Source of the DNA: Octopus sinensis
Lineage: Eukaryota
NCBI RefSeq assembly: GCF_006345805.1
Contig: NC_043025.1
Location: forward strand, 12,710,001 to 12,774,000
Direction of reading: 5' to 3'
DNA: 64,000 nt
Below, piece by piece: positions 1,401 through 57,600 of the stretch. The position numbers were made by a program, and so were the translations under genes. Within the stretch, counting starts at the first letter, position 1. Each line of letters begins with the position of its first letter. The notes under the pieces are model-generated. The model made no database searches and was not told the origin of the DNA. It was given only the letters and a program-made list of their open reading frames with translations.

Positions 1401-2420
1401 GTGCCAGTGGCACGTAAAAGGGCACCATTCGAGCGAGGTCGTTACCAGAGTGGTCTTACTGGCACCTGTGCTGGTGGCACGTAAAAGGGCACCATCCGAG
1501 CGTGATCGTTACCAGAGTCGTCTTACTGGCACCTGTGCCAGTGGCACGTAAAAGGGCACCATTCGAGCGTGATCGTTACCAGAGTCGTCTTACTGGCACG
1601 TAAAAGGGCACCATTCGAGCGTGATCGTTACCAGAGTCGTCTTACTGGCACCTGTGCCAGTGGCACGTAAAAGGGCACCATTCGAGCGTGATCGTTACCA
1701 GAGTCGTCTTACTGGCACCTGTGCCAGTGGCACGTAAAAGGGCACCATTCGAGCGTGATCGTTACCAGAGTCGTCTTACTGGCACCTGTGCCAGTGGCAC
1801 GTAAAAGGGCACCATTCGAGCATGATCGTTACCAGAGTCGTCTTACTGGCACCTGTGCCAGTGGCACGTAAAAGGGCACCATTCGAGCGTGATCGTTACC
1901 AAAGTCGTCTTACTGGCACCTGTGCCAGTGGCACGTAAAAGGGCACCATTCGAGCGTGATCGTTACCAGAGTGGTCTTACTGGCACCTGTGCCAGTGGCA
2001 CGTAAAAGGGCACCATCCGAGCGTGATCGTTACCAGAGTGGTCTTACTGGCACCTGTGCCGGTGGCACGTAAAAGGGCACCATTCGAGCGTGATCGTTAC
2101 CAGAGTGGTCTTACTGGCACCTGTGCCAGTGGCACGTAAAAGGGCACCATCCGAGCGTGATCGTTACCAGAGTGGTCTTACTGGCACCTGTGCCGGTGGC
2201 ACGTAAAAGGGCACCATTTGAGCGTGATCGTTACCAGAGTGGTCTTACTGGCACCTGTGCTGGTGGCACGTAGAAGGGCACCATTCGAGCGTGATCGTTA
2301 CCAAAGTCGTCTTACTGGCACGTAAAAGGGCACCATTCAAGCGTGCTTGTTACCAAAGTCGTCTTACTGGCACCTGTGCTGGTGGCACATAAAAGGGCAC
2401 CATTCGAGCGAGGTCGTTGC
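1401..2420 (+). repeat. 67-bp minisatellite, about 15 units, matching a module of an RTE LINE 3' UTR
   Basis: Unit starts at 1401, 1468, 1535; same module occurs in RTE copies at 29.7, 30.6 and 37.3 kb. Confidence 0.92.
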
Positions 2421-2499
2421 CACACCAGGGAACAATGGAGTGAGCTACAAGGTATATAAATATTGCCCGAAAATACGTTTGCAGCTATTTGCACTGCTA

Positions 2500-2690
2500 C
2501 GAGAACTGTTGAGGAAAAAAGCTGTGATTGAAAAAGATTTAGAGCTTGTGATCCAAGCAAACCCCTCAGACTTAGAAAAATTGCCCAGTTCCCTTACAAC
2601 TGGAGAAAATACAAGCATGATGGTGGTAGTTGAGGGTAGAAAGCCCAGGTGTTACAAATGTGGCAAGGAAGGCCACATAAGGTCGAGCAT
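2500..2690 (+). mobile_element. Second short copy of the ORF1 zinc-knuckle region
   Basis: DLELVIQANPSDLEKLPSSLT..GRKPRCYKCGKEGHIRSS is nearly identical to the 28-645 ORF. Confidence 0.8.
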
Positions 2691-2773
2691 GCGTCGAGTT
2701 TTGACAAGGCGAACGGAATCTTTTGAGCTGCTTGCCAGCGGTTTCTCGGCGAGTGTTGTACTAGTGGAAGAGA

Positions 2774-3910: not shown

Positions 3911-4362
3911 CAAACTCTTCATATTTTCATTTTCAGATATCATGCATGTTATCATAAACTTAATTTATTTTCTCAGTATCCTTTTATATTTACATATTCT
4001 TAATTGTTATTACACACATGTGAGCGAGAACACTTTGAGATATTTTTGGTATCTAACATATGTCAGATACTGCGAGCGCTGCTTCTGATTGGTCAATCCA
4101 TGGTGATGACCCGAGGTCACGGTGACGGCACTACTTTTGTCATTCATAAGTTAGAACTAAACTTCATTCATTACTTTCACGAGCAGGTAGAATGTAGCCA
4201 TGTAATTAAACAAACATACTATCTTTTTTTATACCAGATATCACTTAAAGTCATATACACATAAAATATAAACATTTCTGGTGGTAATTCAATTTTTTGT
4301 TGCCCAAAAAATCCCAACATATTTCGTCTGCTCGTCGATACTCTTGCAGTGCAGGTAGATCT

Positions 4363-10799: not shown

Positions 10800-10804
<5 letters not shown>

Positions 10805-10843
<39 letters not shown>

Positions 10844-11269: not shown

Positions 11270-11344
<75 letters not shown>

Positions 11345-16500: not shown

Positions 16501-19500
16501 ACTGCTATCTCTAGCGGTCGGGTGTTCATCATTGACAAAACCAAGGAAGGTCAAAAATCACATGATCCGGTGGTCTCAGCGCTGGAGATGGTGGGGGATT
16601 TATCTCCCCACTAGCAATATAAACAAGAATGCATTTTACACCAAGAGCCAATATGAGAAGTTCACTCATGATTTCTCTTGCAGTATAGCTTGTTCTAACA
16701 CTGCATGCACATTTGGGTGATGATTAAATATTACCTCTCAGGTATTAATTTGTCGTTAAGATATCTATTACTAAACAGGTGTGTCGTAACAGGGTTGACC
16801 AGGGAATGATAACAACAAGAACAATCTCCAATGACCTACCTTTCGCTTCAACTTCCAGTAGACATACACCAAATCCACAACATCGTAGTCAATGTTGAAC
16901 TTTGTAGAGACTTCCCGCACATTGACCAGAGTGTAAAACTCCTCGTCAAGCTGAGTTAGTCTACAAAAGAAAAAAATAATAATAATAATTAATTCGTTCG
17001 TTTATTGGCCACAAGGGTTAACGAAAATCAATTAAAACATAAAGGGACAAAACACAAGATGAAAGTTACAAAGGGTTTTGTCCGTTTGAAAAAGGTCCAT
17101 GTACAAAAAAAGGATGGCAACAAATATAAGTAACAATTAAAACTCCCAATAGGGGGAGGCGCTTCGAAAGGGTTACTCGTGAGAAAACCCATAAAAGCCA
17201 CGGGAGCCTGGTCAAAAGTGGGGTAGAGAGCCCCTTTCTCCTTTTATAATACTTTTTTTATACTACATAATATCTAACCCATAAAAGACACGGGAGCCTG
17301 GTCAAAAGGGGGGTAGAGAGCCCCTTTCTCCTTTTATAATACGTTTTTATACTACATAATATCTAACCCATAAAAGCCACGGGAGCCTGGTCAAAAGTGG
17401 GGTAGAGAGCCCCTTTCTCCTTTTATAATACTTTTTTTATACTACATAATATCTAACCCATAAAAGCCACGGGAGCCTGGTCAAAAGGTGGGTAGAGAGC
17501 TCCTTTCTCCTTTTATATTACCTTTTAATTCTCACAGGTGTATCCTCAGAATTGGTCCGTTCATACTGGCCATTCTTGCGACATTCACCCACCTTTCAAT
17601 AAACTTGCTACCAGACATCACTTCCCTCTCTACTCTCATCTTCCTTTTCAAGGGAAACTTGAAAAAGTTGATGAGGCCTTGGCCAAAGAGGAAAGTGTCT
17701 GACCTTAGCCCTTTCAAATGGGTCCACCATATCACCTCTTTCGCTACAGCCACTAGGCAAAGGAAAACTGCCTTGCCCTCCCGGTTAATCCTCACTATGG
17801 ATTCAGCTGAATAATAAGTGAATGTTTGCGTATATTCAGTATATATTTCTTTACTACCCACAAGGGGCTAAACACAGAGGGAACAAACAAGGACAGACAA
17901 ACGGATTAAGTTGATTACATCGACCCCAGTGCAAAACTGGTACTTTATTTTATCGACTCCAAAAGGATGAAAGTCAAAGTCGACCTCGGCGGAGTTTGAA
18001 CTCAAAACGTAATGACAGACAAAATACGGCTACGCATTTTGCCCGGCGTGCTAACGTTTCTGCCAAATCGCTGCCATATCAGGTAATACCGGCGTCAAGG
18101 GGTTAAAGAAATTATCTCTTTCTCATTCTTACTAAAATGCTTCAGATCATCCTTGTAGAGCAAATGGTTAATTCTTCCCTTACTGCTTCTCAACTGGTCC
18201 CCTGCTTTTGCCTTCTGTAGAAACACTGCCAGATCGACTGGAGCCTGGTGCAGCCTCCTGGCTTCCCAGACCCCGGTCGAACCGTCCAACTCATGCTAGC
18301 ATGGAAAACAGACATTAAACGATGATGATGATGATGAAGTAGGAGTTTTTAAAAAAAACTTACCTTGAAGCCCGCATATTGGCTTTCTCCTCTACAGAGA
18401 GTTCCTTACGACAGTTTACAATCTCTTTTCTGGGAGATTCCAACTCGGAATCGGCTTGGCTGCGTTCACGTTTTTTACTGTGTTTAGGACAATATGCCTG
18501 GAGCAAAGGAAAGAGAGAGAAATATAGCGTGATATACATAAGCGAGTGTATTTAGGGCTGAGCTTAGTATTCTTAGCTCTTTCGGCCCTTTAAACCCTTA
18601 TTGTTCGCATTATTCTGCCAAAATTAATGCTTATTTATTCTCATTGTTTTGAACTAATCATGCATTATCTTGTGGCTTTGAGATTTTGGATGAGGAAGCT
18701 GTTCATTTTTAGAATGTCTTTAGGGCTGAGCTTAGTATTTTTAGCTCTTTTGGCCCTTTAACCCTTATTATTCTGCCAAAATTAATTATTTTTTTATCCA
18801 AATAGTTTTGAACTAATCATGGATTATCTTGTAGCTATGAGATTTTGATGAGGTAGCTGTTAATTTTTTAAACAATATTGTAGGGTTGGTGTGAGAGACC
18901 AGATCTGGCCAGTTTGACCATAAAACAGGCAGAATACTTTTGCCCGGATATGACCGGTTTAAATGCTAAAGGGTTAAACCAGTCATGTCCAGGAGAAAAT
19001 ATTTTACCTTGTTTTATGGTCAAGCTGACCAGATCCGGCTTCTCACACCTAACCTACAATGTGGTTCTAAAAATAAGCAATCATATTGCTGTACCCAAGA
19101 AGACCTGTTCTCTCCAGCAGAAATGTTAAGGGCCCAACCTACCACTCCTAATTAAGAGAACTGACTAACGAGTGTTGTGTGCCAGTGGCACATAACAGCA
19201 TTCGTGCTGGTGTCGCATTAAAAGCACCCAACACACTCTGTAAAGTGGTTGGCTTTAGGAAAGGCATCCAAATGTAGAAACCCATGCTGAATCAGAATGG
19301 AACCTGGTGCACTTCTCCTGCTTGCCAGCTTTGGTTAAACCATCCAACCCATGTCAGATGATGATGGACATCTGAGAGCTATGGAATAATGCATCATCAT
19401 CATCGTTTAACGTCCGCTTTCCATGCTAGCATGGGTTGGATGGTTCAACTGGGGTCTGGGGAGCCCGAAGGCTGCACCAGGCCAGTCAGATCTGGCAGTG

Positions 19501-21106
19501 TTTCTACAGCTGGATGCCCTTCCTAACGCCAACCACTCCGAGAGTGTAGTGGGTGATTTTATGTGCCACCGACACAGGTGCCAGACGAGGCAGGCAGACG
19601 GCCACGCTCGGATGGTGTTTTTTATGTGCCACCGACACAGGTGCCAGACGAGGCTGGCGAACGGCCATGATCGGATGGTGTTTGTTACATGCCCACAGCA
19701 CAGAGGCCAGTCGATGCGGTGCTGGCTACGGCCACGTTCGGATGGTTTTCTTATGTGCCACCTGCACTGGTACCACAAAGATACAAATTCCATTGATGTT
19801 CATCTATTTTGATTTGGTTTGATTTTGATTTTCACTTGCCTCAACAACAGGTCTTCACAAGTGTCACAAGAAGGAAGGTATGCACAGGTGGACTGACTAC
19901 GTCCCAGGTAGGGGCCACGGGTTATGGCCTCACTAGTCTTGCCGGGTCTTCTCACACACAGCATACTTCCATAGGTCTCGGTCTCTAGTCATTTCCTTGG
20001 TGAGACCTAAAGTTCGAAGGTCGTGCTTCACCACCTCGTCCCAGGTTTTCCTGGGTCTACCTCATGATTACCGAAAATCTTTGATTCAATGCTGAGTGGC
20101 CGAAACAGAAATATCGTTATAGTAAATATTCTGTTCAATACAACAGATTTGGTTGTCAGTTGCTTGACCGTAACCACTTGAGATTTTATGTCCCTTAGTA
20201 CCTGACAATATGTACATCTCTGATCATGAGCAAGAGTGGTGGGAGAGAGCAAAACAGCCATGTTTTGAGAGGGATTCTTTGAGGTTATAAATATAACAAA
20301 AGCAAAGTTTGAAGGAAATATTGACCATTTTTCATGCTTTCTAGGAGTCAGCACACAGGAAATAACAGTTACCAGCCAGGGACCAAAACCATATTACACA
20401 GTGTTAGTCGTCCCTCCTCCTCTCTCATTTCTTCTATTAACTGTTTTTTTTTTCAGCAAAAAAGTGCCGCAACGACAGTACAGTCGGCAGGAGACGGTAG
20501 AGACCGAACCACTGGAGCGACAGAGAGTATCAAGATGTTCTTCATTTTGCTCTCCAGATGGCGCTCCCTTTTCCAGACCGTCCCCATCGGTACCGCAACC
20601 ACTTGTGTCTAAGATGAACAGAGGCAGAGAGGATGTCCACCACTGAAAGGTACCTTACACAGGTTAATAAGCTCGGAGAGGGACAGAGATTATCTGGCAG
20701 CGCAACAAGAGAAGAGAAAGGAACATGTCCAGTTGTACGTACCTTTAATTTTACTCCGCTCTCCACATCAGATTCATCCAATATCGTTCGCATCTCCAGG
20801 TTGTTGTTGAAAGCACAGGTAACATGGAAGGCTGTCTTGCAGGTTTTCACTGAGCACTGAATGCATGCTCCAACGCGCTCCTTGCATAGACAACACACTA
20901 ATGCCCAACGACTTGGCTGCAACACAGAGAAAGAAATATTTTTTTTAAAATTCTTATATAAAAGTATGCGTGTGTATGTCTACATATATATCATCATCAT
21001 CATATATATATATATATATATATCTAACCTAATAATTACATGCTATTATTTTAATATTTATAGCTGTAATTTCAGTGTCACCAATCCTAAAAAGAATGAT
21101 TATATG

Positions 21107-31700: not shown

Positions 31701-33197
31701 AAATGATGCCTTTTATGTGCCACCTGCATAGGAGCCAGTCCAGCGGCACTGGCAACGTCCTCACTCAAATGTGTTGTAGTTTCAAAAAAGATTCTTTTTG
31801 ATGTAAATAATTTTTGGTGTTAACATGGTCCGATTTGAACTTTATCTTCTACGGAAGGAAGAGCAAGTCTTCTTCTATCAAACTGTCAATTTTGGTCAAC
31901 TTGCGCCACAGGGTCTTGGAGGAGGTAGTGTTAGTTGAAGGCTACCAAACCTACCACACACAGACAACCTCAGCTTTATATAGAGAGAGATATACAGTGT
32001 AAAGATGATCGGTTCTTATCCAGTCTGGTAGTATGTACACATCCAGGAATAAGACACCTGATGACTACCACAGATTAAACCAATTGAAACAGAGTATAGA
32101 TGGAAATATTATAAATATACAGTGTAAAGATGGCTAGTTTTAATTCAGTTTGATACTTTGTACGCATCAGGCAATAAAGACACCGGATGACAATAACAAC
32201 AACAAAACGACAATACTTACTTCAGCAGGTTTATTGTGCTGTGAGCCAAACGTTGGACTCCGCAGACCATTAGGACTCATTTTACTGCCTGTATAATAAA
32301 AAAAAGAGAAACAAAGATGATACAGACAAGGAAACAGAAAATGACAGACTCTACTTAAGTTAATTTTTTGGCTCAAAAAGCAAAAAGCAAGGCCATGTAG
32401 GGGGACATGGAGTTATGTACAGGGTGGTGTTCATGCAAAGAGTTCAGGCTATTTCTGGTCAAGGGAGACTTTGAACTGAGCGGTCGTTGGCATCTTCACC
32501 ATCTCGTCCGGCAGCTTATTCCACGGATTGGCAACCCGGACGGAGAAAGCCCCTCTCCTTCGATTGAGATGAAATTGTCGCAGAGAGAGCTTTTCGGAAT
32601 GACCCCGCAGCCAACGCTCTGGAGCAGGAGTGAAGAACAGCTCTTTCGAGAATTCACACTTTCCGCTTATGATGCTGTGAGCAAGAATGAGATCACCACG
32701 GCGTCGTCGTTTTTCTAGAGAATAAAGGTCGAGCGTCTTCAGCCTTTCTTCATAAGACAAATGCTTGAGACCAAGAATTTGGCACAAACCAGCAATTTTA
32801 AGGGAGTGGGAGTTAAGTCAATTACATCGACCCCAGTGCTAAATTGGTTTTTTAAATTAATCAAGACCCGAGAGATTAAAAGGCAAAGGTGACCTCTGTG
32901 GAATTTGAACTCACAACACAAGGATGGACAAAATGGTGCCAAGTATTTTGCCTTGGTACAGAAACGGCTTCAAATATTGGAACAAGGCAAGCAATTTCAG
33001 GGTAGGGGCTAAGTCGGATACATTGATCCCAGAGCTCAACTGGTATTTATTTCATTGACCCCCACAAAGGATAAAAAGCAAAGTCGACTTCAGTGGAATT
33101 TGAACTCACAACACCAAGATTGATGAAATACTGCCAAGCATTTTGCCCGGAGCAGGAGTGGTTCTGCCCCCTCATTACCTTACTACTACTACTGCTG

Positions 33198-36360: not shown

Positions 36361-38133
36361 TACGACGGGTTTCTTTCAGTTTCCGTCTACCAATCCACTC
36401 ACAAAGCTTTGGTCGGCCCGAGGCTATAGTAGAAGACACTTGCCCAAGGGGCTACGCAGTGGGACTGAACCCGGAACCATGTGGTTGGTTAGCAAGCTAC
36501 TTACCACACAGCCACTCCTGCGCCTTGTAATTCATCCCTTATTTTTTAACTCCTTAACCTCAATACAAGTGCAGTTTCCACACTGGTAGCTCAACATCAA
36601 ACCCTGGCATCAATCTTTTATAACTTTTCAACTTGTCACTACAACCTCTTTCACTCTATAAAACCATTTCATATTTATTACCTTCTGTATTTTGGGGAGT
36701 AGAAATAGGGAGTTTTTCACTTGTTTTTGTCAGAAAAATATTTTCTACCCAGTTCCTGCATACTCTTCCCTGAGCTTTCAGTGTACCTCAGGGGCTTGTC
36801 TAAGATAAATCCTCCCAAGGTCTCTTGAAGATTTATACTTACATATAACTCTATCAACACACTAAACCTTTTTATTTCATTTTCTGTAACTGATCCTGAA
36901 TTCTGCCAGTCTTTATGCAAATTGCTTTTTACTGTCTCGGCCTTGTTGCAAAGTGATTATCAACATGAACAGTTCAGCTGTGAATTATCATATCCTATTT
37001 CTTTACTACCCACAAGGGGCTAAACACAGAGGAGACAAACAAGGACAGACAGACGGATTAAGTCGATTACATCGACCCCAGTGCGTAACTGGTACTTAAT
37101 TTATCGACCCCGAAAGGATGAAGGCAAAGTCGACCTCAGAACGTAGGGGCAGACAAAATATCTTATCCAAGACCACTTGCGAAGACCTGTTGAGGCAAGT
37201 GAAATCGAAATCAAATTCAATGACTGGCATCTGTACAAGCGGCGCGCTAAGAGCACCACCTGAGCATGATCGTTGTGCCAGAGCGGTTAACTGGATTCCG
37301 TGCAGGTAGCACATAAAAAGAACCATTCGAGCGTGATCATTACTTGCATCGCCTTACTGGCATGTGAAAAAAAACATTCGAGCAAGGTCATTGCCAGTGC
37401 GGCTGCACTGGTCACCTTTGCAGGTGGCACATAAAAAACACCATTTGAGTGTGGCCGGACTTCCCAAGTACGGCAAATCACCCAAAAGCCTCAATTCCCT
37501 GTCTGGCTAGCATAAAAGTGAGAGAAGTAAGAGAGAGAGAGAAAAAAGGGTCTTTCGGTTCCTAACCTGGACTTTGTTCCATCCAAAATGTTCTTTTACT
37601 GCGAATGGACATTGTGATGAGTCGATGACAACTGAAAGAAAACAGAGGAAATATTTTAATAAATATTCAGAATTCAGGGGTCAGAACAGTTTTATGTGAG
37701 TCTCATAAGACAGGGGGGAAAAAAGGGAAAATATTGTGCAGGATTTCTATAAGCTTACTCTGCAATTTGAAATCAATATTCTAGCTCTGAGAATAGGAAA
37801 AGGTGGTTTTGAGGGGAGGGTCAAGTATTCTTTTATTTCATAAAGGAAATTATAATACTGAAAAAATTGGTGATCTTTCATCTTAGGTGTTGTGATTACC
37901 TGATTTTGATTGCCTCGATTGCTGTTATATGCCCGCAGTGCAACTGCGCGGAGTTCTGTTCTGTTTGCGGCACGACATGTTCAGTGTTGGTAGCAACTCA
38001 CTGCATAAAAATGTTATTGCGTCGAAGTTTGGTTTTGCTTTGTTTGTATTGCATATTGCAGTATTTTTAGTTGATTACAACATTTTAAACTTTGATATTC
38101 GATTCGAGTTTGGGTTTATAACGTTAGGCACAG

Positions 38134-41100
38134 GAGAATTCATCTACTAAGCAATTGCCCCAGCTTCCCTTCAGGGTTGGCGAAAGCGATGTGGTGGACA
38201 ATGAAAAACCTGGCTGATGACAGTCAAGGCTGATCTGGAACCCAGCCCACGAAGCAATTGCCCCAGCTCCCCTTCAGGGTTGGCGAAAGCGATGTGGTGG
38301 ACAACAAAAAAACCTGGCTGATGACAGTCAAGGCTGATCTGGAACCCAACCCATGAAGTAATTGCCCCAGCTCCCCTTCAGGGTTGGCGAAAGCGATGTG
38401 GTGGACAACAAAAAACCTGGCTGATGACAGTCAAGGCTGATCTGGAACCTAACCCACGAAGCAATTGCCCCAGCTCCCCTTCAGGGTTGGCAAATGCGAT
38501 GTGGTGGACAACGAAAAACCTGGCTGGTGACAGTCAAGGCTGATCTGGAACCCAACCCATGAAGTAATTGCCCCCCAGCTCCCCTTCAGGGTTGGCGAAA
38601 GCGATGTGGTGGACAACGAAAAACCTGGCTGATGACAGACAAGGCTGATCTGGAACCCAACCCACGAAGCAATTGCCCCAGCTCCCCTTCAGGGTGGCGA
38701 AAGCGATGTGGTGGACAACGAAAAACCTGGCTGATGACAGTCAAGGCTGATCTGGACCCAACCCACGAAGCAATTGCCCCAGCTCCCCTTCAGGTTGGCG
38801 AAAGTGATGTGGTGGACAATGAAAAACCTGGCTGATGACAGTCAAGGCTGATCTGGAACCCAACCCACGAAGCAATTGCCCCAGCTCCCCTTCAGGTTGG
38901 CGAAAGCGATGTGTGGACAACGAAAAACCTGGCTGATGACAGTCAAGGCTGATCTGGAACCCAACCTATGAAGCAATTGCCCCAGCTCCCCTTCAGGGTT
39001 GGCGAAAGCGATGTGGTGGACAACGAAAAACCTGGCTGATGACAGTCAAGGCTGATCTAGAACCCAACCCACGAAGCAATTGCCCCAGCTCCCCTTCAGA
39101 GTTGGCGAAAGCGATGTGGTGGACAACGAAAAACCTGGCTGATGACAGTCAAGGCTGATCTGGAACCCAACCCACGAAGCAATTGCCCCAGCTCCCCTTC
39201 AGGGTTGGCGAAAGCGATGTGGTGGACAACGAAAAACCTGGCTGATGACAGTCAAGGCTGATGTTGAACCCAACCCACGAAGCAATTGCCCCAGCTCCCC
39301 TTCAGGGTTGGTGAAAGCGATGTGGTGGACAACAAAAAACCTGGCTGATGACAGTCAAGGCTGATCTGGAACCTAACCTACGAAGCAATTGCCCCAGCTC
39401 CCCTTCAGGGTTGGCGAAAGCGATGTGGTGGACAACGAAAAACCTGGCTGATGACAGTCAAGGCTGATCTGGAACCCAACCTACGAAGCAATTGCCCCAG
39501 CTCCCCTTCAGGGTTGGCGAAAGCGATGTGGTGGACAACAAAAAACCTGGCTGATGACAGTCAAGGCTGATCTGGAACCTAACCCACGAAGCAATTGCCC
39601 CAGCTCCCCTTCAGGGTTGGCAAATGCGATGTGGTGGACAACGAAAAACCTGGCTGGTGACAGTCAAGGCTGATCTGGAACCCAACCCATGAAGTAATTG
39701 CCCCAGCTCCCCTTCAGGGTTGGCGAAAGCGATGTGGTGGACAACGAAAAACCTGGCTGATGACAGACAAGGCTGATCTGGAACCCAACCCACGAAGCAA
39801 TTGCCCCAGCTCCCCTTCAGGGTTGGCGAAAGCGATGTGGTGGACAACGAAAAACCTGGCTGATGACAGTCAAGGCTGATCTGGAACCAACCCACGAACC
39901 AATTGCCCCAAGCTCCCTTCAAGGTTGGCGAAAAATAGTGGTGGACAACGAAAAACCTGGCTGATGACAGTCAAGGCTGATCTGGAACCCAACCTATGAA
40001 GCAATTGCCCCAGCTCCCCTTCAGGGTTGGCGAAAGCGATGTGGTGGACAACGAAAAACCTGGCTGATGACAGTCAAGGCTGATCTAGAACCCAACCCAC
40101 GAAGCAATTGCCCCAGTCCCTTCAGAGTTGGCGAAAGCGATGTGGTGGACAACGAAAAACCTGGCTGATGACAGTCAAGGCTGATCTGGAACCCAACCCA
40201 CGAAGCAATTGCCCCAGCCCCTTCAGGGTTGGCGAAAGCGATGTGGTGGACAACGAAAAAACCTGGCTGATGACAGTCAAGCTGATGTTAACCCAACCCA
40301 CGAAGCAATTGCCCCAGCTCCCCTTCAGGGTTGGTGTGAAAGCGATGTGGTGGACAACAAAAAACCTGGCTGATGACAGTCAAGGCTGATCTGGAACCTA
40401 ACCTACGAAGCATTGCCCCAGCTCCCCTTCAGGGTTGGTGAAAGCGATGTGGTGGACAACAAAAAACCTGGCTGATGACAGTCAAGGCTGATCTGGAACC
40501 TAACCTACGAAGCAATTGCCCCAGCTCCCCTTCAGGGTTGGCGAAAGCGATGTGGTGGACAACGAAAAACCTGGCTGATGACAGTCAAGGCTGATCTGGA
40601 ACCCAACCTACGAAGCAATTGCCCCAGCTCCCCTTCAGGGTTGGCGAATGCGATGTGGTGGACAACGAAAAACCTGGCTGATGACAGTCAAGGCTGATCT
40701 GGAACCCAACCCACGACGAAGCAATTGCCCCAGCTCCCCTTCAAGGTTGGCGAAAAAATGTGGTGGACAACGAAAAACCTGGCTGATGACAGTCAAGGCT
40801 GATCTGGAACCCAACCTATGAAGCAATTGCCCCAGCTCCCCTTCAGGGTGGCGAAAGCGATGTGGTGGACAACGAAAAACCTGGCTGATGACAGTCAAGG
40901 CTGATCTGGAACCCAACCCACGAAGCAATTGCCCCAGCTCCCCTTCAAGGTTGGCGAAAAAATGTGGTGGACAACGAAAAACCTGGCTGATGACAGTCAA
41001 GGCTGATCTGGAACCCAACCTATGAAGCAATTGCCCCAGCTCCCCTTCAGGGTTGGCGAAAGCGATGTGGTGGACAACGAAAAACCTGGCTGATGACAGT

Positions 41101-41816
41101 CAAGGCTGATCTGGAACCCAACCCACGAAGCAATTGCCCCAGCTCCCCTTCAAGGTTGGCGAAAAAATGTGGTGGACAACGAAAAACCTGGCTGATGACA
41201 GTCAAGGCTGATCTGGAACCCAACCTATGAAGCAATTGCCCCAGCTCCCCTTCAGGGTTGGCGAAAGCGATGTGGTGGACAACGAAAAACCTGGCTGATG
41301 ACAGTCAAGGCTGATCTAGAACCCAACCCACGAAGCAATTGCCCCAGCTCCCCTTCAGGGTTGGCGAAAGCGATGTGGTGGACAACGAAAAACCTGGCTG
41401 ATGAGTCAAGGCTGATCTGGAACCCAACCCACGAAGCAATTGCCCCAGCTCCCCTTCAGGGTTGGCGAAAGCGATGTGGTGGACAACGAAAAACCTGGCT
41501 GATGACAGTCAAGGCTGATCTGGAACCCAACCCACGAAGCAATTGCCCCAGCTCCCCTTCAGGGTTGGCGAAAGCGATGTGGTGGACAACGAAAAACCTG
41601 GCTGATGACAGTCAAGGCTGATCTGGAACCCAACCTAGGCCCCCATATCTACGGCGTTCGCCGCTGGAATAAGGAGTGGTTGGAGATCACGCGGTTGTTA
41701 GCCTCAAATCGCCAGGCCTGGTCGGCGTTTGTGAGAGATGCAGCATTGAGGATGAATGAAGCCAGCTCAACCCACCCCGGGTGAATGCTGTCTCAAGACA
41801 AGACAAGAAGAGGAAA
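38134..41816 (+). mobile_element. 5'-truncated RTE-clade LINE whose ORF C-terminal segment is amplified as a tandem array
   Basis: After the array the frame continues ADLEPNLGPHIYGVRRWNKEWLEITRLLASNRQAWSAFVRDAALRMNEASSTHPG*, then a (caaga)n tail. ttaggcacag at 38124-38133 and 41817-41826 is a candidate target duplication. Confidence 0.88.
38148..41637 (+). repeat. 103-bp satellite-like array, about 34 units
   Basis: Unit spacing 39001 to 39104; unit encodes EAIAPAPLQGWRKRCGGQRKTWLMTVKADLEPN. Confidence 0.97.
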
Positions 41817-45636: not shown

Positions 45637-45683
<47 letters not shown>

Positions 45684-45688
45684 GTAGG

Positions 45689-47600: not shown

Positions 47601-48149
47601 GTTCTCCAAAATAGTTGATCACATACACACACAAACACAAGTATAGGATCTTTTCCTTTTGATAGACAGAATTCAACACAATTTCTAGCTAACTAAACAC
47701 ACTCTTGTGACCATCACTTTTAAGGGTTCGCAAGACATGGTCCCAAAACTCATTTTAAGTGTGGACCAAACGTAAGCTGTGTATAAATACACACGCACAC
47801 ACACGTGTGTGTACGCATAGACACGGGCCTATAAAATAATAATTTTTGTTCTCTCCTTTAATATTGACACAAAACGTTTAACAATTAGGGTTCGAACAAC
47901 CCCCACCTCTCCTCTGGAATATGTGAATGAGGGGAAGACCCTGGAAGAATTTCTGATATCTTAAAGAAAATGAATTTTAAATGAACTTCAACACTTAATG
48001 GGGTTTTCAACATTATTTTTGTTTTAATTTTTCAAACACACAGTAGGGCGTTCCTTTAATTAAGCTCATTCTTGTGATTAGGGTTATTATATATTAAATT
48101 ACGTAAATTAAAGTAATATTTTACATCTCAGAGAAGTAATCATAAACTA

Positions 48150-48525
48150 CAAACAATAACTCTGAGCACCTTTTCAAACTCCACCCATCTAACACATGTG
48201 GACATATTTACAAAGTAAGAAAACAGCACAGCTCCTTCCATGGCTTTAGTAAACATTTTTTCACGCTAAGAGTTGCTGAAGCATGGAACAAACTGCCGGC
48301 ATCAGTTGTTGGTTGTCGGAGCATTGCATCCTTGAAAACTTCCATGCTTCTTGAGATTCGCCAACACTACACCTGATCTTCTCCCCTCCATACACACACA
48401 CACAAGCATCTATCTGACTCATACACTGTTCACTTCCCAGACATTTCTACATCACTGCATATACTCCGACAAGTTGTGGTGCACCTGAGCACTGTATATA
48501 ATCATTTCATTATTATTATATTATT
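48150..48525 (+). mobile_element. CR1 LINE 3' fragment, single-copy version of the 123-bp array unit
   Basis: FFTLRVAEAWNKLPASVVGCRSIASLKTSMLLEIRQHYT* then 3' UTR and (att)n tail. Confidence 0.9.
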
Positions 48526-50869
48526 ATTATTATAACAAAAATTAATTAAAAAGTGCTTTTTTCCCCCTGCTAAATTGCCCTCAAATCACACTTTTTTTTC
48601 CCAATAATGGTATGAATTCCCATGAGTTTAACACAAATTTGCAAAATTTTCTGAAAATACCAAAAACTGAAGACCTTAAACTGGAATCCTCTTCAGAACT
48701 AATCAGAACCTACTGAAAGGTATTTACAGAAAATTCCATTAAAAAATATCTACTTTTCTACGACAGAGAGAGAGTAAACGAACTTTGGGTAAGCCCCGAT
48801 TCGTTTCGGTAATTCTGGAAAGCCAAGTTAGTTTTTTATGACATCTCTCATCATTAACTGAACACCAGTATCAATTTTTAATTGCGCAGCTTTCGTCCGT
48901 TTTACTTATATTTTTTTTTTTTTGACCTAAAGTTTCTCACAAATTCAACCCCGAATAGATCACACCAACACTCAATCCTCTCCGGAATAATTAAATCACC
49001 TCTAAATTAGGTAAATCGTGTTTCACTTACAACTTTTTCATTCAACAAGTGACCGACTTTTTTTTTTTAATTTCTGTGCAGACCTAAAACCTGGCGTGGC
49101 GCTTAAATTGAAGCCACGTTGAGGTTTACAGCGAAGAACATTTCATACAATGGTAATAGGGACATGAAAAGCAGTATTCCAAGGGGAAATGCAGGAGAAA
49201 CACGGGAGTACCCAAGAGTTTCTTGGAGGCATTGGCTGGAATATTCGTCTTAATCACGAACATTAAAAATACTAAATAAATATACATAAGAGTGGCTGTG
49301 TGGTAAGTAGCTTGCTTACCAACCACATGGTTCCGAGTTCAGTCCCACTGCGTGGCACCTTGGGCAAGTGTCTTCTACTATAGCCTCGGACCGACCAATG
49401 CCTTGTGAGTGGATTTGGTAGACGGAAACTGAAAGAAGCCTGTCGTATATCTGTATATGTATATTTATATATGCGTGTGTGTGTGTGTTTGCCCCCCTAG
49501 CATTGCTTGACAACCGATGCTGGTGTGTTTATGTCCCCGTTACTTAGCGGTTCGGCAAAAGAGACCGTTAGAATAAGTACTGGGCTTACAAAAGAATAAG
49601 TCCCGGGGTCGAGTTGCTCGATTAAGGGCGGTGCTCCAGCATGGCCGCAGTCAAATGACTGAAACAAGTAAAAGAGTAAATATACATAAGAGTGGCTGTG
49701 TGGTAAGTAGCTTGTCTACCAACAACATGGTTCCAGGTTCATTCCCACTGTGTGGCACCTAGGGCAAGTGTCTTCTACTATAGCCTCGGGCCGACCAAAG
49801 CCTTGTGAGTGGATTTGGTAGACGGAAACTGAAAGAAGCCCGTCGTATATATATGTGTGTGTGTATATGTATATATAGGGAGAGTTTACGAAAAAAAAAA
49901 GCAAAAGGCGAAGACAGGTGGAGTACAAAACAAACAGATGTATTAGTATAACGCTCAGGAATAGAAAAGGTCTTTTACGTTTCGAGCCTACGCTCTTCTA
50001 CAGAAAGGGACACAGAAAGAAACAAGGAGAGAATATATATATATATATATATATAGGCATTCTTTCGATATGAGTCCCATTTTACCTCACGTGTATTTGT
50101 TTACATTTGAAGAAGATCGTCACTTTCCATAAAATGTTTGATTTTTTATATATATGGGGTTAGTGGTGGGGGGAAGATTATCTTCTTTTCTTCAGAAATG
50201 TAAATAAACCCACGTGGGTTTATAAGTGACAGTTATGTTACTAGTACCGAATGATCGCCTATGTATGTATATATATATATATATATATAATGTGTGTGTG
50301 TGTGTATGTATGTGTAAATGAAAACATTACACCATTTGAAAGAAAACGTTTGACATGGGTACAGGATTGGCTGTGTGGTAAGTAGCTTGCTTACCAACCA
50401 CATGGCTCCGGGTTCATTCCCACTGCGTGGCACCTTGAGCATGTCTTCTACTATAGCCTTAAGCCGACCAAAGCTTTGTGAGTGGACTTGGTAGACAGAA
50501 ACTGAAAGAAGCCTGTCGTGTATATGTATATATATATATAATGATAAATCTCATATATATATATATATATATGTATGTATGTGTATATGTTTGTGTGTCT
50601 GTGTTTGTCCCCTCAACATCACTTGACAACCGATGCTGGTGTGTCTACGTCCCCGTCAGTTCGGCAAGAGAGACCGATAGAATAAGTACTAGGCTTACAA
50701 AGACTAAGTCCTGGGGGTCGATTTGCTCGACTAAAGGCGGTGCTCCAGCAAGGCCCCGAACTCAAATGACTGAAACAAAGTATGCATTGCTTTCGAAACT
50801 CCTTCTGCCAGAGATACAACAACAGAAACGATGTAAATATTTTGAGTTCCATTATTGATGTGAATATGT

Positions 50870-51525
50870 TAACATCATCATCATTGTTCGACCGTGGTCG
50901 AGACAATGGAATTTACCATGCTACGCCAGACTTCACGGTCCATCATGGCTCTACGGAGGTCCTGTTGCTGGATGCCTGTATCCCTGGAGATTACATCAGG
51001 GTAGGAGAGTGTGTGCCATCTGGTATTGCTTGCAGATGGCTTCCAGAGGAGAAGAGTAGAGATTACCTCTTTTTCAGCTCTACAACAGTGTCCAGCAAAC
51101 TGGACTCTCCTACCTTTCACAAGAGATGACACAGGTGGTAGTTTCCTATATATTTGTACTTTGGTTGGATGACGCTTCCACAAGAGAACCCTAACCCTAA
51201 CTATCATCATCATCATTGTTTGACAGTGGTCGAGACAATGGAATTTAACTTGCGACGCCAGACTTCATGGTCCATCATGGCATTACGGAGGTCCTGTTGC
51301 TGGATGCCTGTATCCCTGGAGATTACATCAGGGTAGGAGAGTGTGAGCCCTCTGGTATTGCGAGCAGATGGCTTCCAGAGGAAGAGAGTAGAAATTACCT
51401 CTTCTCCTACCTTTCACAAGAGATGACACAGGTGGTAGTTTCCTATATATTTGTACTTTGGTTGGATGGTGCTTCCACGAGAGATTTTGAGCTCTCATAA
51501 GGAGGCGAGTGTACGTTCCATCCAA
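50870..51525 (-). mobile_element. Two head-to-tail RTE-clade LINE 3' ends (~335 bp each)
   Basis: DGTYTRLLMRAQNLSWKHHPTK..RRVQFAGHCCR..LLLWKP..MMDREVWR..*, each followed by a (tga)n tail. Confidence 0.88.
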
Positions 51526-51731
51526 CCACCTCTCAAGCTTCTTTGATAACGTCCAGGTTAAAACAGTGCAGGAGTGGCTGTGTGGTAAGTAGCTTGCTTA
51601 CCAACCACATGGTTCCGGGTTCAGTCCCACTGCGTGGCACCTTGGGCAAGTGTTTTCTGCTATAGCCCCGGGCCGACCAATGCCTTGTGAGTGGATTTGG
51701 TAGACGGAAACTGAAAGAAGCGTGTCGTATA

Positions 51732-54175: not shown

Positions 54176-55289
54176 ATTTTTCGATTTGGCGCCATCGTTT
54201 ATCTCTCTGCAGTGAAGATGTTAGCGCGGGATGTCAACCTTTTTGGGTTTTTACATCCGCTTGAAACAAAATATAAGGGCGATCTTTCGTCTCTAGTAGA
54301 CCTTTCCGTCGATTTCCGTAAAAAATTTTTTTTTGTTACATATGGGCTTGCGGGAACTTTTGAAGTAATATACATACATATACACACACATACATACATA
54401 TACACATACACCGAGTAAAAAATTCCAGTTATCTCTTTCTTTCACACACTACTCTGTCTCTTCACACACACTAACAGAAGCACTTCACTTACACAACATA
54501 CTGTCTGTCTCCCACACCCCATCAAACACACACACACACACACATGTACATCAATGCTTGCCATGCACGGTAACTTCAAAAGAACTTCCCTCGTCATACA
54601 ATCGCTTTCTCTTAGTCTCTTTCGCTCTCATTACTTCAAAAGTTCCCGCAAGCCCATATGTAAAAAAAAAAAAATTTTTTACGGAAATCGACGGAAAGGT
54701 CTACTAGAGAGGAAAGATCGCCGAAAACTTTAAAACTTCGTATACTCGTAGAATGTGTCAAAATAAAACATTTGTAGAAAATTTCTTTAAAAAGCATCAA
54801 CTTTCCCGAATGTTACAAGACAACACAGTAACAAAGCAACAAAATAGTTGGGGGCCCTATTGTGTAGTTATGCCTAAATTCATAATAATACTCTACTCTT
54901 TTACTTGTTTCAGTCATTTGACTGCGGCCATGCTGGAGCACCGCCTTTAGTCGAGCAAATCGACCCCGGGACTTATTCTTTGTAAGCCCAGTACTTATTC
55001 TATCGGTCTCTCTTTTGCCGAACTGCTAAGTAACGGAGACGTAAACACACCAGCATCGGTTGTCAAACAATGCTAGGGGGACAAACACAGACACACATAC
55101 GTACATATATATATATACATATATACGACAGGCTTCTTTCAGTTTCCGTCTACCAAATCCACTCACAAGGCATTGGTCGGCCCGAGGCTATAGCAGAAGA
55201 CACTTGCCCAAGATGCCACGCAGTGGGACTGAACCGGGAACCATGTGGTTGGTTAGCAAGCTACTTACCACACAGCCACTCCTGCGCCT

Positions 55290-57600
55290 AATAATAATGA
55301 AATTATTGTATACAGTGCTCAGGTGCCCCCCAACTTGTCCAAAGTGCGTATAAAGCATCTGCAGTGATGTAGAAATGTCTGGGAAGTGAACTCTCCTACC
55401 CTGATACATGCTTGCTTGTGTGTATGGAGGGGAGGAGAAGATCAGGTGTAGTGTTGGTGAATCTCAGAAAGCATGGAAGTTTTGAAGGATGCAGTGCTCC
55501 GACAACTAACAACTGATGCCAGCAGTTTGTTCCATGCTTCAGCGTGTGTATGGAGGGGAGAAGATCAGGTGTAGTGTTGGCGAATATCAGGAAGCATGGA
55601 AGTTTTGAAGGATGCAGTGCTCCGACAACTAACAACTGATGCCAGCAGTTTGTTCCATGCTTCAGCGTGTGTATGGAGGGGAGAAGATCAGGTGTAGTGT
55701 TGGCGAATCTCAGGAAGCATGGAAGTTTTGAAGGATGCAGTGCTCCGACAACTAACAACCGATGCCGGCAGTTTGTTCCATGCTTCAGCGTGTGTATGGA
55801 GGGGAGAAGATCAGGTGTAGTGTTGGCGAATATCAGGAAGCATGGAAGTTTTGAAGGATGCAGTGCTCCGACAACTAACAACTGATGCCAGCAGTTTGTT
55901 CCATGCTTCAGCGTGTGTATGGAGGGGAGAAGATCAGGTGTAGTGTTGGCGAATCTCAGGAAGCATGGAAGTTTTGAAGGATGCAGTGCTCCGACAACTA
56001 ACAACCGATGCCGGCAGTTTGTTCCATGCTTCAGCGTGTGTATGGAGGGGAGAAGATCAGGTGTAGTGTTGGTGAATCTCAGAAAGCATGGAAGTTTTGA
56101 AGGATGCAGTGCTCCGACAACTAACAACTGATGCCAGCAGTTTGTTCCATGCTTCAGCGTGTGTATGGAGGGGAGAAGATCAGGTGTAGTGTTGGTGAAT
56201 CTCAGAAAGCATGGAAGTTTTGAAGGATGCAGTGCTCCGACAACTAACAACTGATGCCAGCAGTTTGTTCCATGCTTCAGCGTGTGTATGGAGGGGAGAA
56301 GATCAGGTGTAGTGTTGGCGAATCTCAGGAAGCATGGAAGTTTTGAAGGATGCAGTGCTCCGACAACTAACAACTGATGCCAGCAGTTTGTTCCATGCTT
56401 CAGCGTGTGTATGGAGGGGAGGAGATCAGGTGTAGTGTTGGTGAATCTCAGAAAGCATGGAAGTTTTGAAGGATGCAGTGCTCCGACAACTAACAACTGA
56501 TGCCAGCAGTTTGTTCCATGCTTCAGCGTGTGTATGGAGGGGAGAAAATCAGGTGTAGTGTTGGTGAATCTCAGAAAGCATGGAAGTTTTGAAGGATGCA
56601 GTGCTCCGACAACTAACAACTGATGCCGGCAGTTTGTTCCATGCTTCAGCGTGTGTATGGAGGGGAGAAGATCAGGTGTAGTGTTGGTGAATCTCAGAAA
56701 GCATGGAAGTTTTGAAGGATGCAGTGCTCCGACAACTAACAACTGATGCCGGCAGTCTGTTCCATGCTTCAGCGTGTGTATGGAGGGGAGAAGATCAGGT
56801 GTAGTGTTGGTGAATCTCAGAAAGCATGGAAGTTTTGAAGGATGCAGTGCTCCGACAACTAACAACTGATGCCGGCAGTTTGTTCCATGCTTCAGCGTGT
56901 GTATGGAGGGGAGAAGATCAGGTGTAGTGTTGGTGAATCTCAGAAAGCATGGAAGTTTTGAAGGATGCAGTGCTCCGACAACTAACAACTGATGCCGGCA
57001 GTTTGTTCATGCTTCAGCGTGTGTATGGAGGGGAGAAGATCAGTGTAGTGTTGGTGAATCTCAGAAAGCATGGAAGTTTTGAAGGATGCAGTGCTCGAAA
57101 AACAACTGATGCCGGCAGTTGTTCCATGCTTCAGCGTGTGTATGGAGGGGAGAAGATCAGGTGTAGTGTTGGTGAATCTCAGAAAGCATGGAAGTTTTGA
57201 AGGATGCAGTGCTCCGACAACTAACAACTGATGCCAGCAGTTTGTTCCATGCTTCAGCGTGTGTATGGAGGGGAGAAGATCAGGTGTAGTGTTGGCGAAT
57301 CTCAGGAAGCATGGAAGTTTTCAAGGATGCAGTGCTCCGACAACCAACAACTGATGCCGGCAGTTTGTTCCATGCTTCAGCAATTCTCAGCGTGAAAAAA
57401 TGTTTCCTAAAGTCATGGAAGGAGCTGTGCTGTATTCTGACTTTTTAAATATGTCCACGGGTGTTAGACTGGTGGAGTTTGAAAAGGTGCTCAGAGTTAT
57501 TGTTTGTAAGATGGTTAATAATTTTATGGGTGTCTGCCAAGTCAGCTGCCAGACGTCGGAGTTTCAATGTGTCCATATAAGCAGTGGCATGGCGAGGTGG
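55290..57600 (-). mobile_element. CR1 LINE 3' fragment containing the 123-bp array
   Basis: 57600-57385 reads MDTLKLRRLAADLADTHKIINHL..SNTRGH..FFTLRIAE. The 3' UTR and (att)n tail resume at 55417-55290. Confidence 0.9.
55418..57381 (-). repeat. 123-bp satellite-like array, about 16 units
   Basis: Unit gtgtgtatggaggggagaagatcagg..ttccatgcttcagc; 41-codon periodicity in the ORF track. Confidence 0.97.

What the first reader, a model, noticed from the sequence alone, without database searches (positions are those of the whole stretch)
1401..57381. Repeated conversion of LINE 3' ends into tandem satellite arrays across several retrotransposon families
Five independent tandem amplifications in 64 kb each trace to the 3' part of a non-LTR element: RTE 3' UTR 67 bp x ~15, Tx1 3' UTR 90 bp x ~4, RTE ORF end 103 bp x ~34, RTE end+tail ~335 bp x 2, CR1 stop-codon region 123 bp x ~16. 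SINE bodies are also repeatedly tandemised (13.6, 24.0, 27.6, 57.9 kb). TE-derived satellites are known in general. What stands out is the density, the bias to LINE 3' ends and the intact parent context. Possible mechanisms (inference): repeated RT template jumping during target-primed reverse transcription, reverse transcription of a small circular RNA, or eccDNA rolling-circle reinsertion, versus ordinary post-insertion slippage or unequal exchange.
Basis: partly seen in the sequence, partly recalled or inferred. Interest (0 to 1): 0.72.

Follow-up and report, generated by a model that had tools for sequence, protein, structure and literature searches.

The report
Retroposon-tail minisatellites in cephalopod-like DNA
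A gene-bearing stretch of cephalopod-like DNA holds several tandem arrays built from the 3' ends of decayed LINE copies, and they look like ordinary stepwise DNA-level minisatellite growth of a kind already described, not a new reverse-transcription process.

Summary
Homology confirms three parents. The 123-bp unit is the last 33 codons, the stop and 21 nt of UTR of a CR1-like ORF2. The 90-bp unit lies 6 bp after the stop of an L1/Tx1-like (zf-RVT) ORF2. The pair is two RTE-like 3' ends. The "RTE" label is unverified for the 103-bp and 67-bp arrays.

- The four multi-copy arrays carry multi-site variants shared by blocks of units, so they grew by stepwise DNA-level duplication, not in one burst.
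- The 67-bp repeat is a variable repeat built into a dispersed retroposon family, with 2-4.5 units at five other loci in the window.
- The "335 bp x 2" is two separately 5'-truncated RTE copies, each with its own tail, joined by a TTAGGG-containing filler. That indicates tandem insertion, not amplification.
- No RT or endonuclease domain was found in the 64 kb. All LINE DNA here is extreme 3' end, so the "3' bias" cannot be separated from 5' truncation.
- SINEs and anonymous DNA are tandemised too.

LINE-3'-derived satellites are already published. Interest is low to moderate.

The parts
1376..2422 (+). 67-bp array (~15 units, two 52-bp deletion variants). It starts with a half unit of the second subtype. 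It lacks the family's ~180-bp tail and abuts a gag-like fragment at 2423.
   Evidence: TRF; sequence; unit table; family alignment
19392..19781 (-). Sister copy of the 67-bp family: ~4 units of 63-65 bp followed by a ~180-bp tail ending ...GACGTTAAACGATGATGATG.
29541..30030 (-). Sister copy of the 67-bp family: ~4.5 units plus tail.
30544..30850 (-). Sister copy of the 67-bp family: 5' leader (GAAGACCTGTTGAGGCAAG...) plus ~4 units, no tail.
31477..31790 (-). Sister copy of the 67-bp family: ~2 units plus tail.
37170..37457 (+). Sister copy of the 67-bp family: leader plus ~4 units, no tail.
17535..17867 (-). C-terminal end of an L1/Tx1-like ORF2 (111-aa open frame, stop at 17532-17534).
   Evidence: Matches residues 275-358 of the 360-aa zf-RVT protein P0177, E 2e-41
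17186..17526 (-). 90-bp array x 3.8 in the 3' UTR, starting 6 bp after the stop. u1 = u3, and u2 and u4 share variants, so a dimer was duplicated.
   Evidence: single-copy in relatives L001 and L002
16975..17185 (-). Rest of that 3' UTR, with AATAAA and an (ATT)n tail.
   Evidence: Sequence; the end aligns with L002
38124..38133 (+). Left copy of the candidate target-site duplication TTAGGCACAG, followed by a 15-bp filler (38134-38148).
   Evidence: 10/10 match, empirical P 0.018
38149..41635 (+). 103-bp array x 34 made from the coding end of a LINE-like ORF. It has block duplications of ~10-11 units and of 2 units.
41636..41816 (+). Continuation of the same ORF (48 codons, stop at 41782-41784) plus a 32-nt UTR with (CAAGA)-like repeats. 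The right TSD copy is at 41817-41826.
48148..48545 (+). Single-unit paralogue of the CR1-like 3' end (ORF end, stop, UTR, (ATT)n tail). It serves as the 'before' state for the 123-bp array.
50870..51187 (-). RTE-like 3' end, copy A. The open frame runs into its own (ATG)n tail.
51188..51201 (-). Filler (sense strand TAGTTAGGGTTAGGGT) between the tail of copy B and the 5' end of copy A.
51202..51565 (-). RTE-like 3' end, copy B. It is less 5'-truncated, has a 35-bp deletion and its own (ATG)n tail.
55291..55417 (-). 3' UTR and (ATT)n tail of the CR1-like copy that carries the array.
55418..57381 (-). 123-bp array x 16. Each unit holds the last 33 codons, the stop and 21 nt of UTR of the CR1-like ORF2, and contains an 11-12-bp inverted repeat.
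57382..57621 (-). Upstream CR1-like ORF2 sequence of the same copy.
   Evidence: tblastn; translation
32434..32817 (-). Another CR1-like ORF2 C-terminus with no array. It is a LINE 3' end that was not tandemised.

Best explanation
The window is intron and intergenic DNA of a cephalopod-like genome, packed with 5'-truncated retroposon copies. In this DNA, short internal segments of many kinds of sequence have been duplicated in tandem and then expanded step by step. The likely processes are replication slippage and unequal sister-chromatid or homologue exchange, that is, ordinary minisatellite dynamics.

Three arrays are locus-specific expansions inside old LINE 3' fragments: the 90-bp, 103-bp and 123-bp arrays. 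The 67-bp array is a local 15-fold expansion of one unit of a variable repeat that a dispersed RTE-tailed retroposon family carries in every copy long enough to span that region. The ~330-bp pair is two RTE 3' ends placed head to tail by insertion, not by amplification.

The apparent preference for LINE 3' ends follows from 5' truncation, because 3' ends are the only LINE DNA present.

Shown: the arrays, their parents, the single-unit relatives, the block-wise variant sharing, and the absence of RT/EN sequence.
Inferred: the molecular process (slippage or unequal exchange) and its timing after insertion.
For: **Stepwise growth.**
- In the 103-bp array, 22 variants are shared by two or more units against 40 singletons. 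They form linked multi-site haplotypes at fixed spacing: units {4,15}, {5,16}, {9,19,31}, {12,22,23} and {18,26,28,30}.
- In the 123-bp array, units u2 and u3 equal u4 and u5. The edge unit u16 keeps the bases of the single-unit paralogue, while central units share derived bases.
- In the 67-bp array, a 2-unit alternation runs over u9-u12, and there are two 52-bp slippage variants between internal TGGCAC repeats.
- In the 90-bp array, u1 = u3, and u2 and u4 share variants.
- One burst of unit-by-unit copying would leave mostly singleton variants.

**Single-unit relatives.**
- The CR1-like paralogue at 48148-48545 aligns through both flanks of the 123-bp array.
- L1-like relatives L001 and L002 carry the 90-bp region once.

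**Junction microhomology.**
- ATGCTT lies near both breakpoints of the 123-bp unit.
- CTA(C) lies at the 103-bp junction, and that junction appears to include 2-3 nt of the left filler.

**Family-borne repeat.** 63-67-bp units occur at five other loci in the window, 2-4.5 units each.

**No LINE body in the window.**
- Pfam on all non-SINE ORFs of >=70 aa found no RVT_1 and no Exo_endo_phos.
- An RTE-family HMM and tblastn hit only C-terminal pieces.

**Tandemisation is general.** SINE arrays cover ~3.7 kb and anonymous arrays ~3 kb.

**Different ages.** The mean difference between units varies among arrays: 3.4% for the 123-bp array and 5.8% for the 103-bp array.
Against: - The 103-bp array sits at the very 5' end of an insertion bounded by a target-site duplication, and its first unit is in phase with the unit junction to within a few bases. 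Under random post-insertion duplication that is a coincidence of a few percent, whereas RT switching at the 5' end of the template would predict it.
- The three highest-copy arrays in the window are all LINE-derived, while SINE and anonymous arrays have only 2-3 copies. With n = 3 this is anecdotal.
- There are no reads, no second haplotype and no orthologous locus. Timing relative to insertion and the exact copy numbers are therefore not verified.
- Block duplications show later DNA-level growth. They do not show how the first duplication arose.
Confidence: 0.7

Rival explanations
1. Reverse transcriptase made the repeats during target-primed reverse transcription. The enzyme either switched back on the RNA template, giving internal arrays, or jumped from the 5' end of one RNA to the 3' end of another, giving head-to-tail copies. 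The repeat was therefore born with the insertion.
For: - RTE pair: copy B's tail is followed by a 16-nt filler (TAGTTAGGGTTAGGGT) and then a differently truncated copy A with its own tail. This is the 'tandem insertion' junction type reported for R2 protein, which also template-jumps in vitro (PMC11371274).
- The 103-bp array lies at the 5' end of a TSD-bounded insertion, in phase with the unit junction.
Against: - Block-wise shared haplotypes in the four multi-copy arrays need several DNA-level steps.
- All 33 junctions of the 103-bp array are one junction plus point mutations, not 33 independent jumps.
- The 90-bp and 123-bp arrays are internal, so they would need repeated precise back-switching.
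- Relatives carry single units.
- Copies A and B differ by ~7% and by a 35-bp deletion. A second, tail-targeted insertion explains them equally well. RTE priming is thought to depend on the 3' microsatellite (PMC6007223).
Confidence: 0.12
2. The arrays were already present in the transcribed source elements and were spread by retrotransposition. In that case each family carries a built-in variable repeat, as SVA and Ogre elements do, rather than each locus gaining one.
For: - This holds for the 67-bp family: 2-4.5 units at five other loci, with two unit subtypes in alternating order.
- It would also explain why the 103-bp array reaches the 5' end of its insertion, if truncation fell inside a pre-existing array.
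Against: - The CR1-like paralogue and the L1-like relatives have one unit.
- The 15-unit array at 1401-2422 is built from one subtype only, so it is a local expansion.
- No second copy of the 103-bp unit exists in the window or in the searched collections.
Confidence: 0.1
3. Extrachromosomal circular DNA, or a small circular RNA, of unit length was copied by rolling circle and reinserted.
For: None specific. Only the regular periods are consistent with it.
Against: - The arrays are in register with parent sequence on one or both sides.
- The 103-bp array lies inside a TSD-bounded LINE insertion that keeps the ORF end and tail.
- Local blocks of different sizes (2 and ~11 units) do not fit one circle.
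Confidence: 0.03
4. The arrays, or their copy numbers, are assembly artefacts.
For: This could not be tested, because no reads are available. Copy number in 2-3.5-kb arrays of 94-97% identical units is the feature most open to error.
Against: - Units carry structured, non-random variants, edge decay and deletion variants. Collapsed or stuttered assemblies do not produce these.
- Flanks join cleanly to parent sequence.
Confidence: 0.05

Closest known systems
Satellites and minisatellites derived from LINE 3' regions: the common cetacean satellite (L1 3' end), the chicken HinfI repeat (CR1 3' UTR plus partial ORF2) and Drosophila 18HT (HeT-A 3' non-coding region). Reviewed in PMC9659126.
   Same: The unit is an internal piece of the 3' UTR or ORF2 end of a non-LTR element, amplified head to tail. 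The chicken case even involves the CR1 ORF2 end plus UTR, like the 123-bp array here.
   Different: Those are abundant, often heterochromatic satellite families. These are single-locus arrays of 0.3-3.5 kb in genic DNA, still embedded in their parent copy. Whether they occur elsewhere in the genome is unknown.
Variable tandem repeats carried inside retroelements: the hypervariable 3' UTR repeats of Ogre LTR retrotransposons (cited in PMC9659126) and the SVA VNTR (own knowledge).
   Same: In the 67-bp family, every copy long enough to span the region has a variable number of 63-67-bp units just upstream of the 3' tail. One locus has expanded to 15.
   Different: This family has an RTE-type (GAT)n tail and no coding sequence in any copy seen. 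It is unclassified (SINE-like, or the UTR of an unseen LINE).
Classical minisatellite and satellite evolution by replication slippage and unequal crossing-over, with higher-order repeats and divergent edge units (own knowledge; reviews PMC6947457, listed but not read, and PMC9659126).
   Same: Multi-unit block duplications, homogenised centres with ancestral edges, deletion variants between internal short repeats, and short microhomology at the founding junction.
   Different: Nothing material.
Head-to-tail 'tandem insertion' by non-LTR reverse transcriptases (R2 template jumping; PMC11371274), and microsatellite-dependent priming of RTE elements (PMC6007223).
   Same: The RTE pair: the tail of one copy, a short filler, then a 5'-truncated second copy with its own tail.
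   Different: Shown experimentally for R2, not for RTE. Here the two copies differ by ~7%, and the events cannot be ordered.

Membership tests
TE-derived minisatellite (tandem amplification of an internal TE segment) | Head-to-tail units of constant period, far beyond chance | tested here: met
   TRF scores 619-6233
TE-derived minisatellite (tandem amplification of an internal TE segment) | The unit is homologous to an interspersed element that exists with a single unit | tested here: met
   - 123 bp: paralogue at 48148-48545.
- 90 bp: relatives L001 and L002.
- Not met for 103 bp, where no relative was found.
TE-derived minisatellite (tandem amplification of an internal TE segment) | Growth by DNA-level multi-unit duplication (higher-order structure) | tested here: met
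   Shared multi-site haplotypes at fixed lags
Satellite DNA family (dispersed or large arrays genome-wide) | The same unit forms arrays at many loci or makes up a sizeable genome fraction | not testable with these tools
   The source genome is not available. The metagenome scans found nothing.
CR1-clade LINE (parent of the 123-bp unit) | ORF2 C-terminus homologous to CR1-type reverse transcriptases | tested here: met
   The peptide matches the C-termini of ~120 bird and turtle RT proteins, with profile E 4e-17. That bird LINEs are CR1 is own knowledge.
CR1-clade LINE (parent of the 123-bp unit) | RT and endonuclease domains upstream; phylogenetic placement of the RT | tested here: not met
   The copy is 5'-truncated, and no RVT_1 or EN domain is in the window. 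The clade is therefore inferred from the C-terminus only.
L1/Tx1-clade LINE (parent of the 90-bp unit) | ORF2 C-terminus of zf-RVT-bearing proteins, followed by a 3' UTR with AATAAA | tested here: met
   P0177 and P0179 (PF13966) match with E 2e-41 and 1e-33, ending at their C-termini. UTR.
L1/Tx1-clade LINE (parent of the 90-bp unit) | Tx1 subgroup specifically (RT phylogeny, site-specific insertion) | not tested
   No RT sequence in the window. L1-Tx1 families are reported as active in Octopus vulgaris (PMC13282606).
RTE-clade LINE (parent of the ~330-bp pair) | Single ORF of ~1000 aa with APE endonuclease plus RT; ORF ends in or next to a 3' microsatellite, with almost no UTR | tested here: met
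   Homologues of 911-1011 aa; the 911-aa P0027 has Exo_endo_phos plus RVT_1, and the match lies at the extreme C-terminus. The stop lies inside the (ATG)n tail here and in L003 and L004.
RTE-clade LINE (claimed parent of the 103-bp and 67-bp units) | Homology to an RTE ORF or UTR | tested here: not met
   - 103-bp peptide: no hit in the word-indexed search, none in the metagenome scan, and none against the RTE profile.
- 67-bp family: it shares only the last ~25 nt, including (GAT)n, with the RTE copies. The RTE relatives have no UTR that could hold it.
RT template-jump concatemer | A tail-to-5'-end junction with filler, inside one target-site duplication | tested here: inconclusive
   The junction type is present in the RTE pair. 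No significant TSD was found around the pair.
RT template-jump concatemer | Units born together: star-like variation with no block structure | tested here: not met
   Block structure is present in the four multi-copy arrays
Rolling-circle / eccDNA reinsertion | An array not in register with parent flanks, and no TPRT hallmarks | tested here: not met
   Parent flanks are in register. There is a TSD around the 103-bp insertion.

The most novel reading that the evidence does not exclude
Some of these repeats were founded by the LINE reverse transcriptase itself. The 103-bp array would have begun as a template switch at the 5' end of a truncated RNA during insertion. The RTE pair would be an end-to-end template jump that picked up a telomere-repeat-like filler. 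If so, TPRT errors would be a regular seed of minisatellites in cephalopod genomes, with DNA-level exchange only expanding them afterwards.
Probability: 0.12. Interest if true: 0.6.

Novelty: new member of a known kind. Interest (0 to 1): 0.27.

Why it matters
If the ordinary reading holds, the window is a clear worked example of how decayed retroposon tails in cephalopod introns become minisatellites. It has 'before' states (single-unit paralogues and relatives) and 'after' states side by side. That is useful for repeat annotation. Such arrays will be mislabelled as LINE copies or inflate LINE counts, and family-borne repeats will split consensus sequences. It does not change what is known about how satellites arise. 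It would matter more only if a genome-wide test showed 3' enrichment beyond 5' truncation, or if young insertions were found to be born with arrays.

Tried and rejected
- **Hairpin-driven slippage as a general cause of a 3' bias.** Only the 123-bp unit folds better than shuffles (z -2.5 and -2.0). The 67-, 90- and 103-bp units do not (z -0.3 to +1.9). Rejected as a general cause.
- **A shared 5' end for the two CR1-like copies (a discrete short element).** Rejected when tblastn showed that ORF homology continues upstream in the array copy.
- **Homologue searches for the 103-bp peptide.** The word-indexed protein search, the RTE and CR1 profiles and the metagenome scan found nothing.
- **A metagenome scan for the conserved tail of the 67-bp family** found nothing.
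- **Identifying the source genome.** The exact look-up of the host exon found nothing. Homologues are at most 41% identical over the full length. The only named one is from Argonauta hians, at 64% over 7% of the query. Orthologous-locus comparison was therefore impossible.
- **Rfam** had no family at gathering score.
- **Cluster names** for the RTE hits were absent.
- **Target-site duplications** for the CR1 copies, the RTE pair and the 67-bp array were not significant.
- **A fuzzy-regex unit splitter** timed out and was replaced by BLAST-based splitting.

Full report
**Observation.** Tandem Repeats Finder reproduces the arrays at the stated places:
- 1401-2422: period 67, ~15 units, with two 52-bp variants and 134/201-bp higher-order periods.
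- 17186-17526: 90 bp x 3.8.
- 38149-41635: 103 bp x 34.
- 55418-57381: 123 bp x 16.

The '~335 bp x 2' is the pair 50870-51187 and 51202-51484, found by self-comparison. SINE multimers at 13.6, 24.0, 27.6 and 57.9 kb are also real. Roughly 24% of the window lies in arrays of period >=50 bp. LINE-like sequence accounts for ~8.5 kb of this, SINEs for ~3.7 kb and anonymous sequence for ~3 kb.

**Setting.** The window is genic.
- A large terminal exon at 11535-13613 on the minus strand belongs to a JADE/BRPF-like gene. PHD-like (zf-HC5HC2H) exon pieces lie at ~20.5-22.0 kb and an EPL1 piece at ~28.5-28.8 kb.
- The full-length homologues of the terminal exon are unnamed. The only named homologue, matching 7% of the query, comes from the octopod Argonauta hians.
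- A C2H2 zinc-finger ORF starts at 62139.
- Several of the repeats discussed here therefore sit in introns.

**123-bp array.**
- The LINE sense strand is the minus strand.
- A single-unit paralogue at 48148-48545 aligns through both flanks of the array.
- The sense frame reads ...NTRGH..FFTLRVAEAWNKLPASVVGCRS.ASLKTSML.EIRQHYT*.
- This peptide, and a third copy at 32434-32817, match the C-termini of about 120 bird and turtle reverse-transcriptase proteins, with profile E 4e-17. Those are CR1-type by own knowledge.
- The unit is the last 33 codons, the stop and 21 nt of UTR, so 'CR1 stop-codon region' is right.
- ORF homology continues upstream to ~57621, and UTR plus an (ATT)n tail lie downstream. 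The parent context is therefore intact.

**90-bp array.**
- It starts 6 bp after the stop of a 111-aa frame (17535-17867, minus strand).
- That frame matches the C-terminal ends of two zf-RVT (PF13966) proteins with E 2e-41 and 1e-33.
- Their contigs, L001 and L002, align through the ORF end and the UTR but hold the 90-bp region once, and TRF finds no such repeat in them.
- 'L1/Tx1-like 3' UTR' is supported. Tx1 itself was not tested.

**The ~330-bp pair.**
- Both copies match the last ~110-125 residues of proteins up to 911-1011 aa long; the 911-aa one scanned with Pfam has Exo_endo_phos plus RVT_1.
- In the window and in relatives L003 and L004, the ORF runs straight into an (ATG)n tail with no UTR.
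- The two copies are truncated at different points, and each has its own tail.
- They are ~93% identical apart from a 35-bp deletion, and are separated by the filler TAGTTAGGGTTAGGGT.
- A simple tandem duplication would not place a filler at the junction only.
- The structure fits either a second RTE insertion at the microsatellite tail of the first, or an end-to-end template jump. RTE priming is thought to depend on such repeats (PMC6007223). R2 protein produces exactly such 'tandem insertion' junctions (PMC11371274).

**103-bp array.**
- No RT or ORF lies upstream. After the array the frame continues for 48 codons to a stop at 41782-41784, followed by a 32-nt UTR.
- The peptide has a LINE-like C-terminal pattern, but no homologue was found by any search. 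'RTE' is therefore unverified.
- A 10/10 direct repeat, TTAGGCACAG, brackets a 15-bp filler, the 34 units, the ORF end and the UTR (empirical P 0.018). The whole is thus one retroposed insertion with the array at its 5' end.

**67-bp array.**
- Related 63-67-bp units occur at 19.6, 29.7-30.0, 30.5-30.8, 31.6-31.8 and 37.2-37.5 kb, with 2-4.5 units each.
- In three of these copies the units are followed by a ~180-bp tail ending ...GACGTTAAACGATGATGATG.
- The repeat is therefore a feature of the family. The 15-unit array is a local expansion of one unit subtype.
- The array lacks the tail, has no ORF next to it, and abuts a gag-like fragment.
- Similarity to the RTE copies is limited to the last ~25 nt.

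**How the arrays grew.**
- The four multi-copy arrays carry variants shared by sets of units in linked, multi-site combinations.
- In the 103-bp array, 22 variants are shared against 40 singletons, with haplotypes {4,15}, {5,16}, {9,19,31}, {12,22,23} and {18,26,28,30}. These indicate duplications of ~10-11 units and of 2 units.
- In the 123-bp array, u2 and u3 equal u4 and u5. The edge unit u16 keeps the paralogue's bases, while central units share derived ones.
- The 67-bp array shows a 2-unit alternation and two deletion variants between internal TGGCAC repeats.
- In the 90-bp array, u1 = u3.
- All 33 junctions of the 103-bp array are one junction plus point mutations. That junction shows CTA(C) microhomology between the left filler and the right breakpoint. 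ATGCTT lies near both breakpoints of the 123-bp unit.
- These are the marks of stepwise DNA-level slippage and unequal exchange. They do not show how the very first duplication arose.

**The claimed 3' bias.**
- No RVT_1 or endonuclease domain was found in any non-SINE ORF of >=70 aa.
- The RTE profile and all LINE proteins recovered hit only C-terminal pieces.
- SINEs and anonymous DNA are also tandemised, though at 2-3 copies.

**Comparison with published work.**
- Satellites from the L1 3' end (cetaceans), from the CR1 3' UTR plus ORF2 end (chicken HinfI), from the HeT-A 3' region, and from the hypervariable 3' UTR repeats of Ogre elements are all reviewed in PMC9659126.
- RTE, CR1, L1-Tx1 and Dong-R4 are the LINE groups reported as recently active in Octopus vulgaris (PMC13282606).
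- The finding is a new example of a known kind.

**What remains open.**
- The position of the 103-bp array at the 5' end of its insertion.
- The origin of the RTE pair.
- Whether a genome-wide, coverage-normalised test would still show 3' enrichment.

Noticed in passing
window 51188-51201: Two telomere-type repeats (sense strand TAGTTAGGGTTAGGGT) form the filler between the tail of one RTE copy and the 5' end of the next. They could be untemplated, or copied from a telomere-repeat-containing template during insertion.
   Followed up: partly
window 11535-13613 (-), ~20545-21997 (-), ~28483-28839 (-), ~31240-31420 (-): Exons of a JADE/BRPF-like PHD-finger gene (zf-HC5HC2H and EPL1 domains). The terminal exon is only ~41% identical to its best database relatives. 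The only named hit is from Argonauta hians.
   Followed up: partly
window 62139-63998 (+), and 61422-62139: A C2H2 zinc-finger ORF runs off the window end. Just upstream is a nested 20/39/59/98-bp periodic array (CACCACTCAAA...TCTTGGA) with open frames encoding LEHHSS..PLK-type repeats. This may be a repetitive coding 5' part of that gene.
   Followed up: no
window 1-645, 2440-2700, 2765-3598 (+): Three gag-like ORF pieces with a CCHC zinc knuckle: two long paralogues and a fragment that is 84.5% identical to 350-504. They surround the 67-bp array. A Tc1/mariner-like transposase C-terminus (...SMPKRVSELKTANGMSTKY*) lies at ~660-840.
   Followed up: no
window 4288-5353 (+): Broken ORFs with DUF3504 and QRICH1-type domains, often seen in Crypton-derived or domesticated genes (own knowledge).
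   Followed up: no
window 7658-8028, 9068-9514, 13625-13963, 26076-26389, 27610-28062: The commonest SINE (~400 bp, with a head that reads as tRNA-like by eye) often carries two or more copies of its ~170-190-bp head before the body. This is multimerisation of the head, not of the whole element.
   Followed up: partly
window 24013-24563, 57942-58550: A second SINE-like family of ~184 bp occurs as 3-unit tandem arrays at two loci (87% and 95-97% identity) and as single units at 17844-18079, 33309-33461 and 36992-37139.
   Followed up: no
window 55399-57006 (-): A 536-aa open frame runs through the 123-bp array because 123 = 41 codons. It is not the CR1 frame, which has a stop in every unit. It is an artefact of periodicity that a gene caller could mistake for a gene.
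   Followed up: yes
window 34663-36359, 10803-11339, 45290-45732: Very long microsatellites: (TA)n of 1.7 kb, (AT)n of 0.5 kb and (AGAT)n of 0.44 kb.
   Followed up: no
window 43802-44614 versus 52113-52381 plus 54273-54726: Two copies of a repeat with internal inverted-repeat hits (foldback or MITE-like). One copy is split by ~1.9 kb of purine-rich sequence that includes a 174-bp x 2.5 array (53292-53719).
   Followed up: partly
window 15986-16472 and 26393-27422: Tandem arrays of anonymous sequence (161 bp x 3, and ~250-270-bp repeats) with no other copy in the window and no LINE or SINE features.
   Followed up: no
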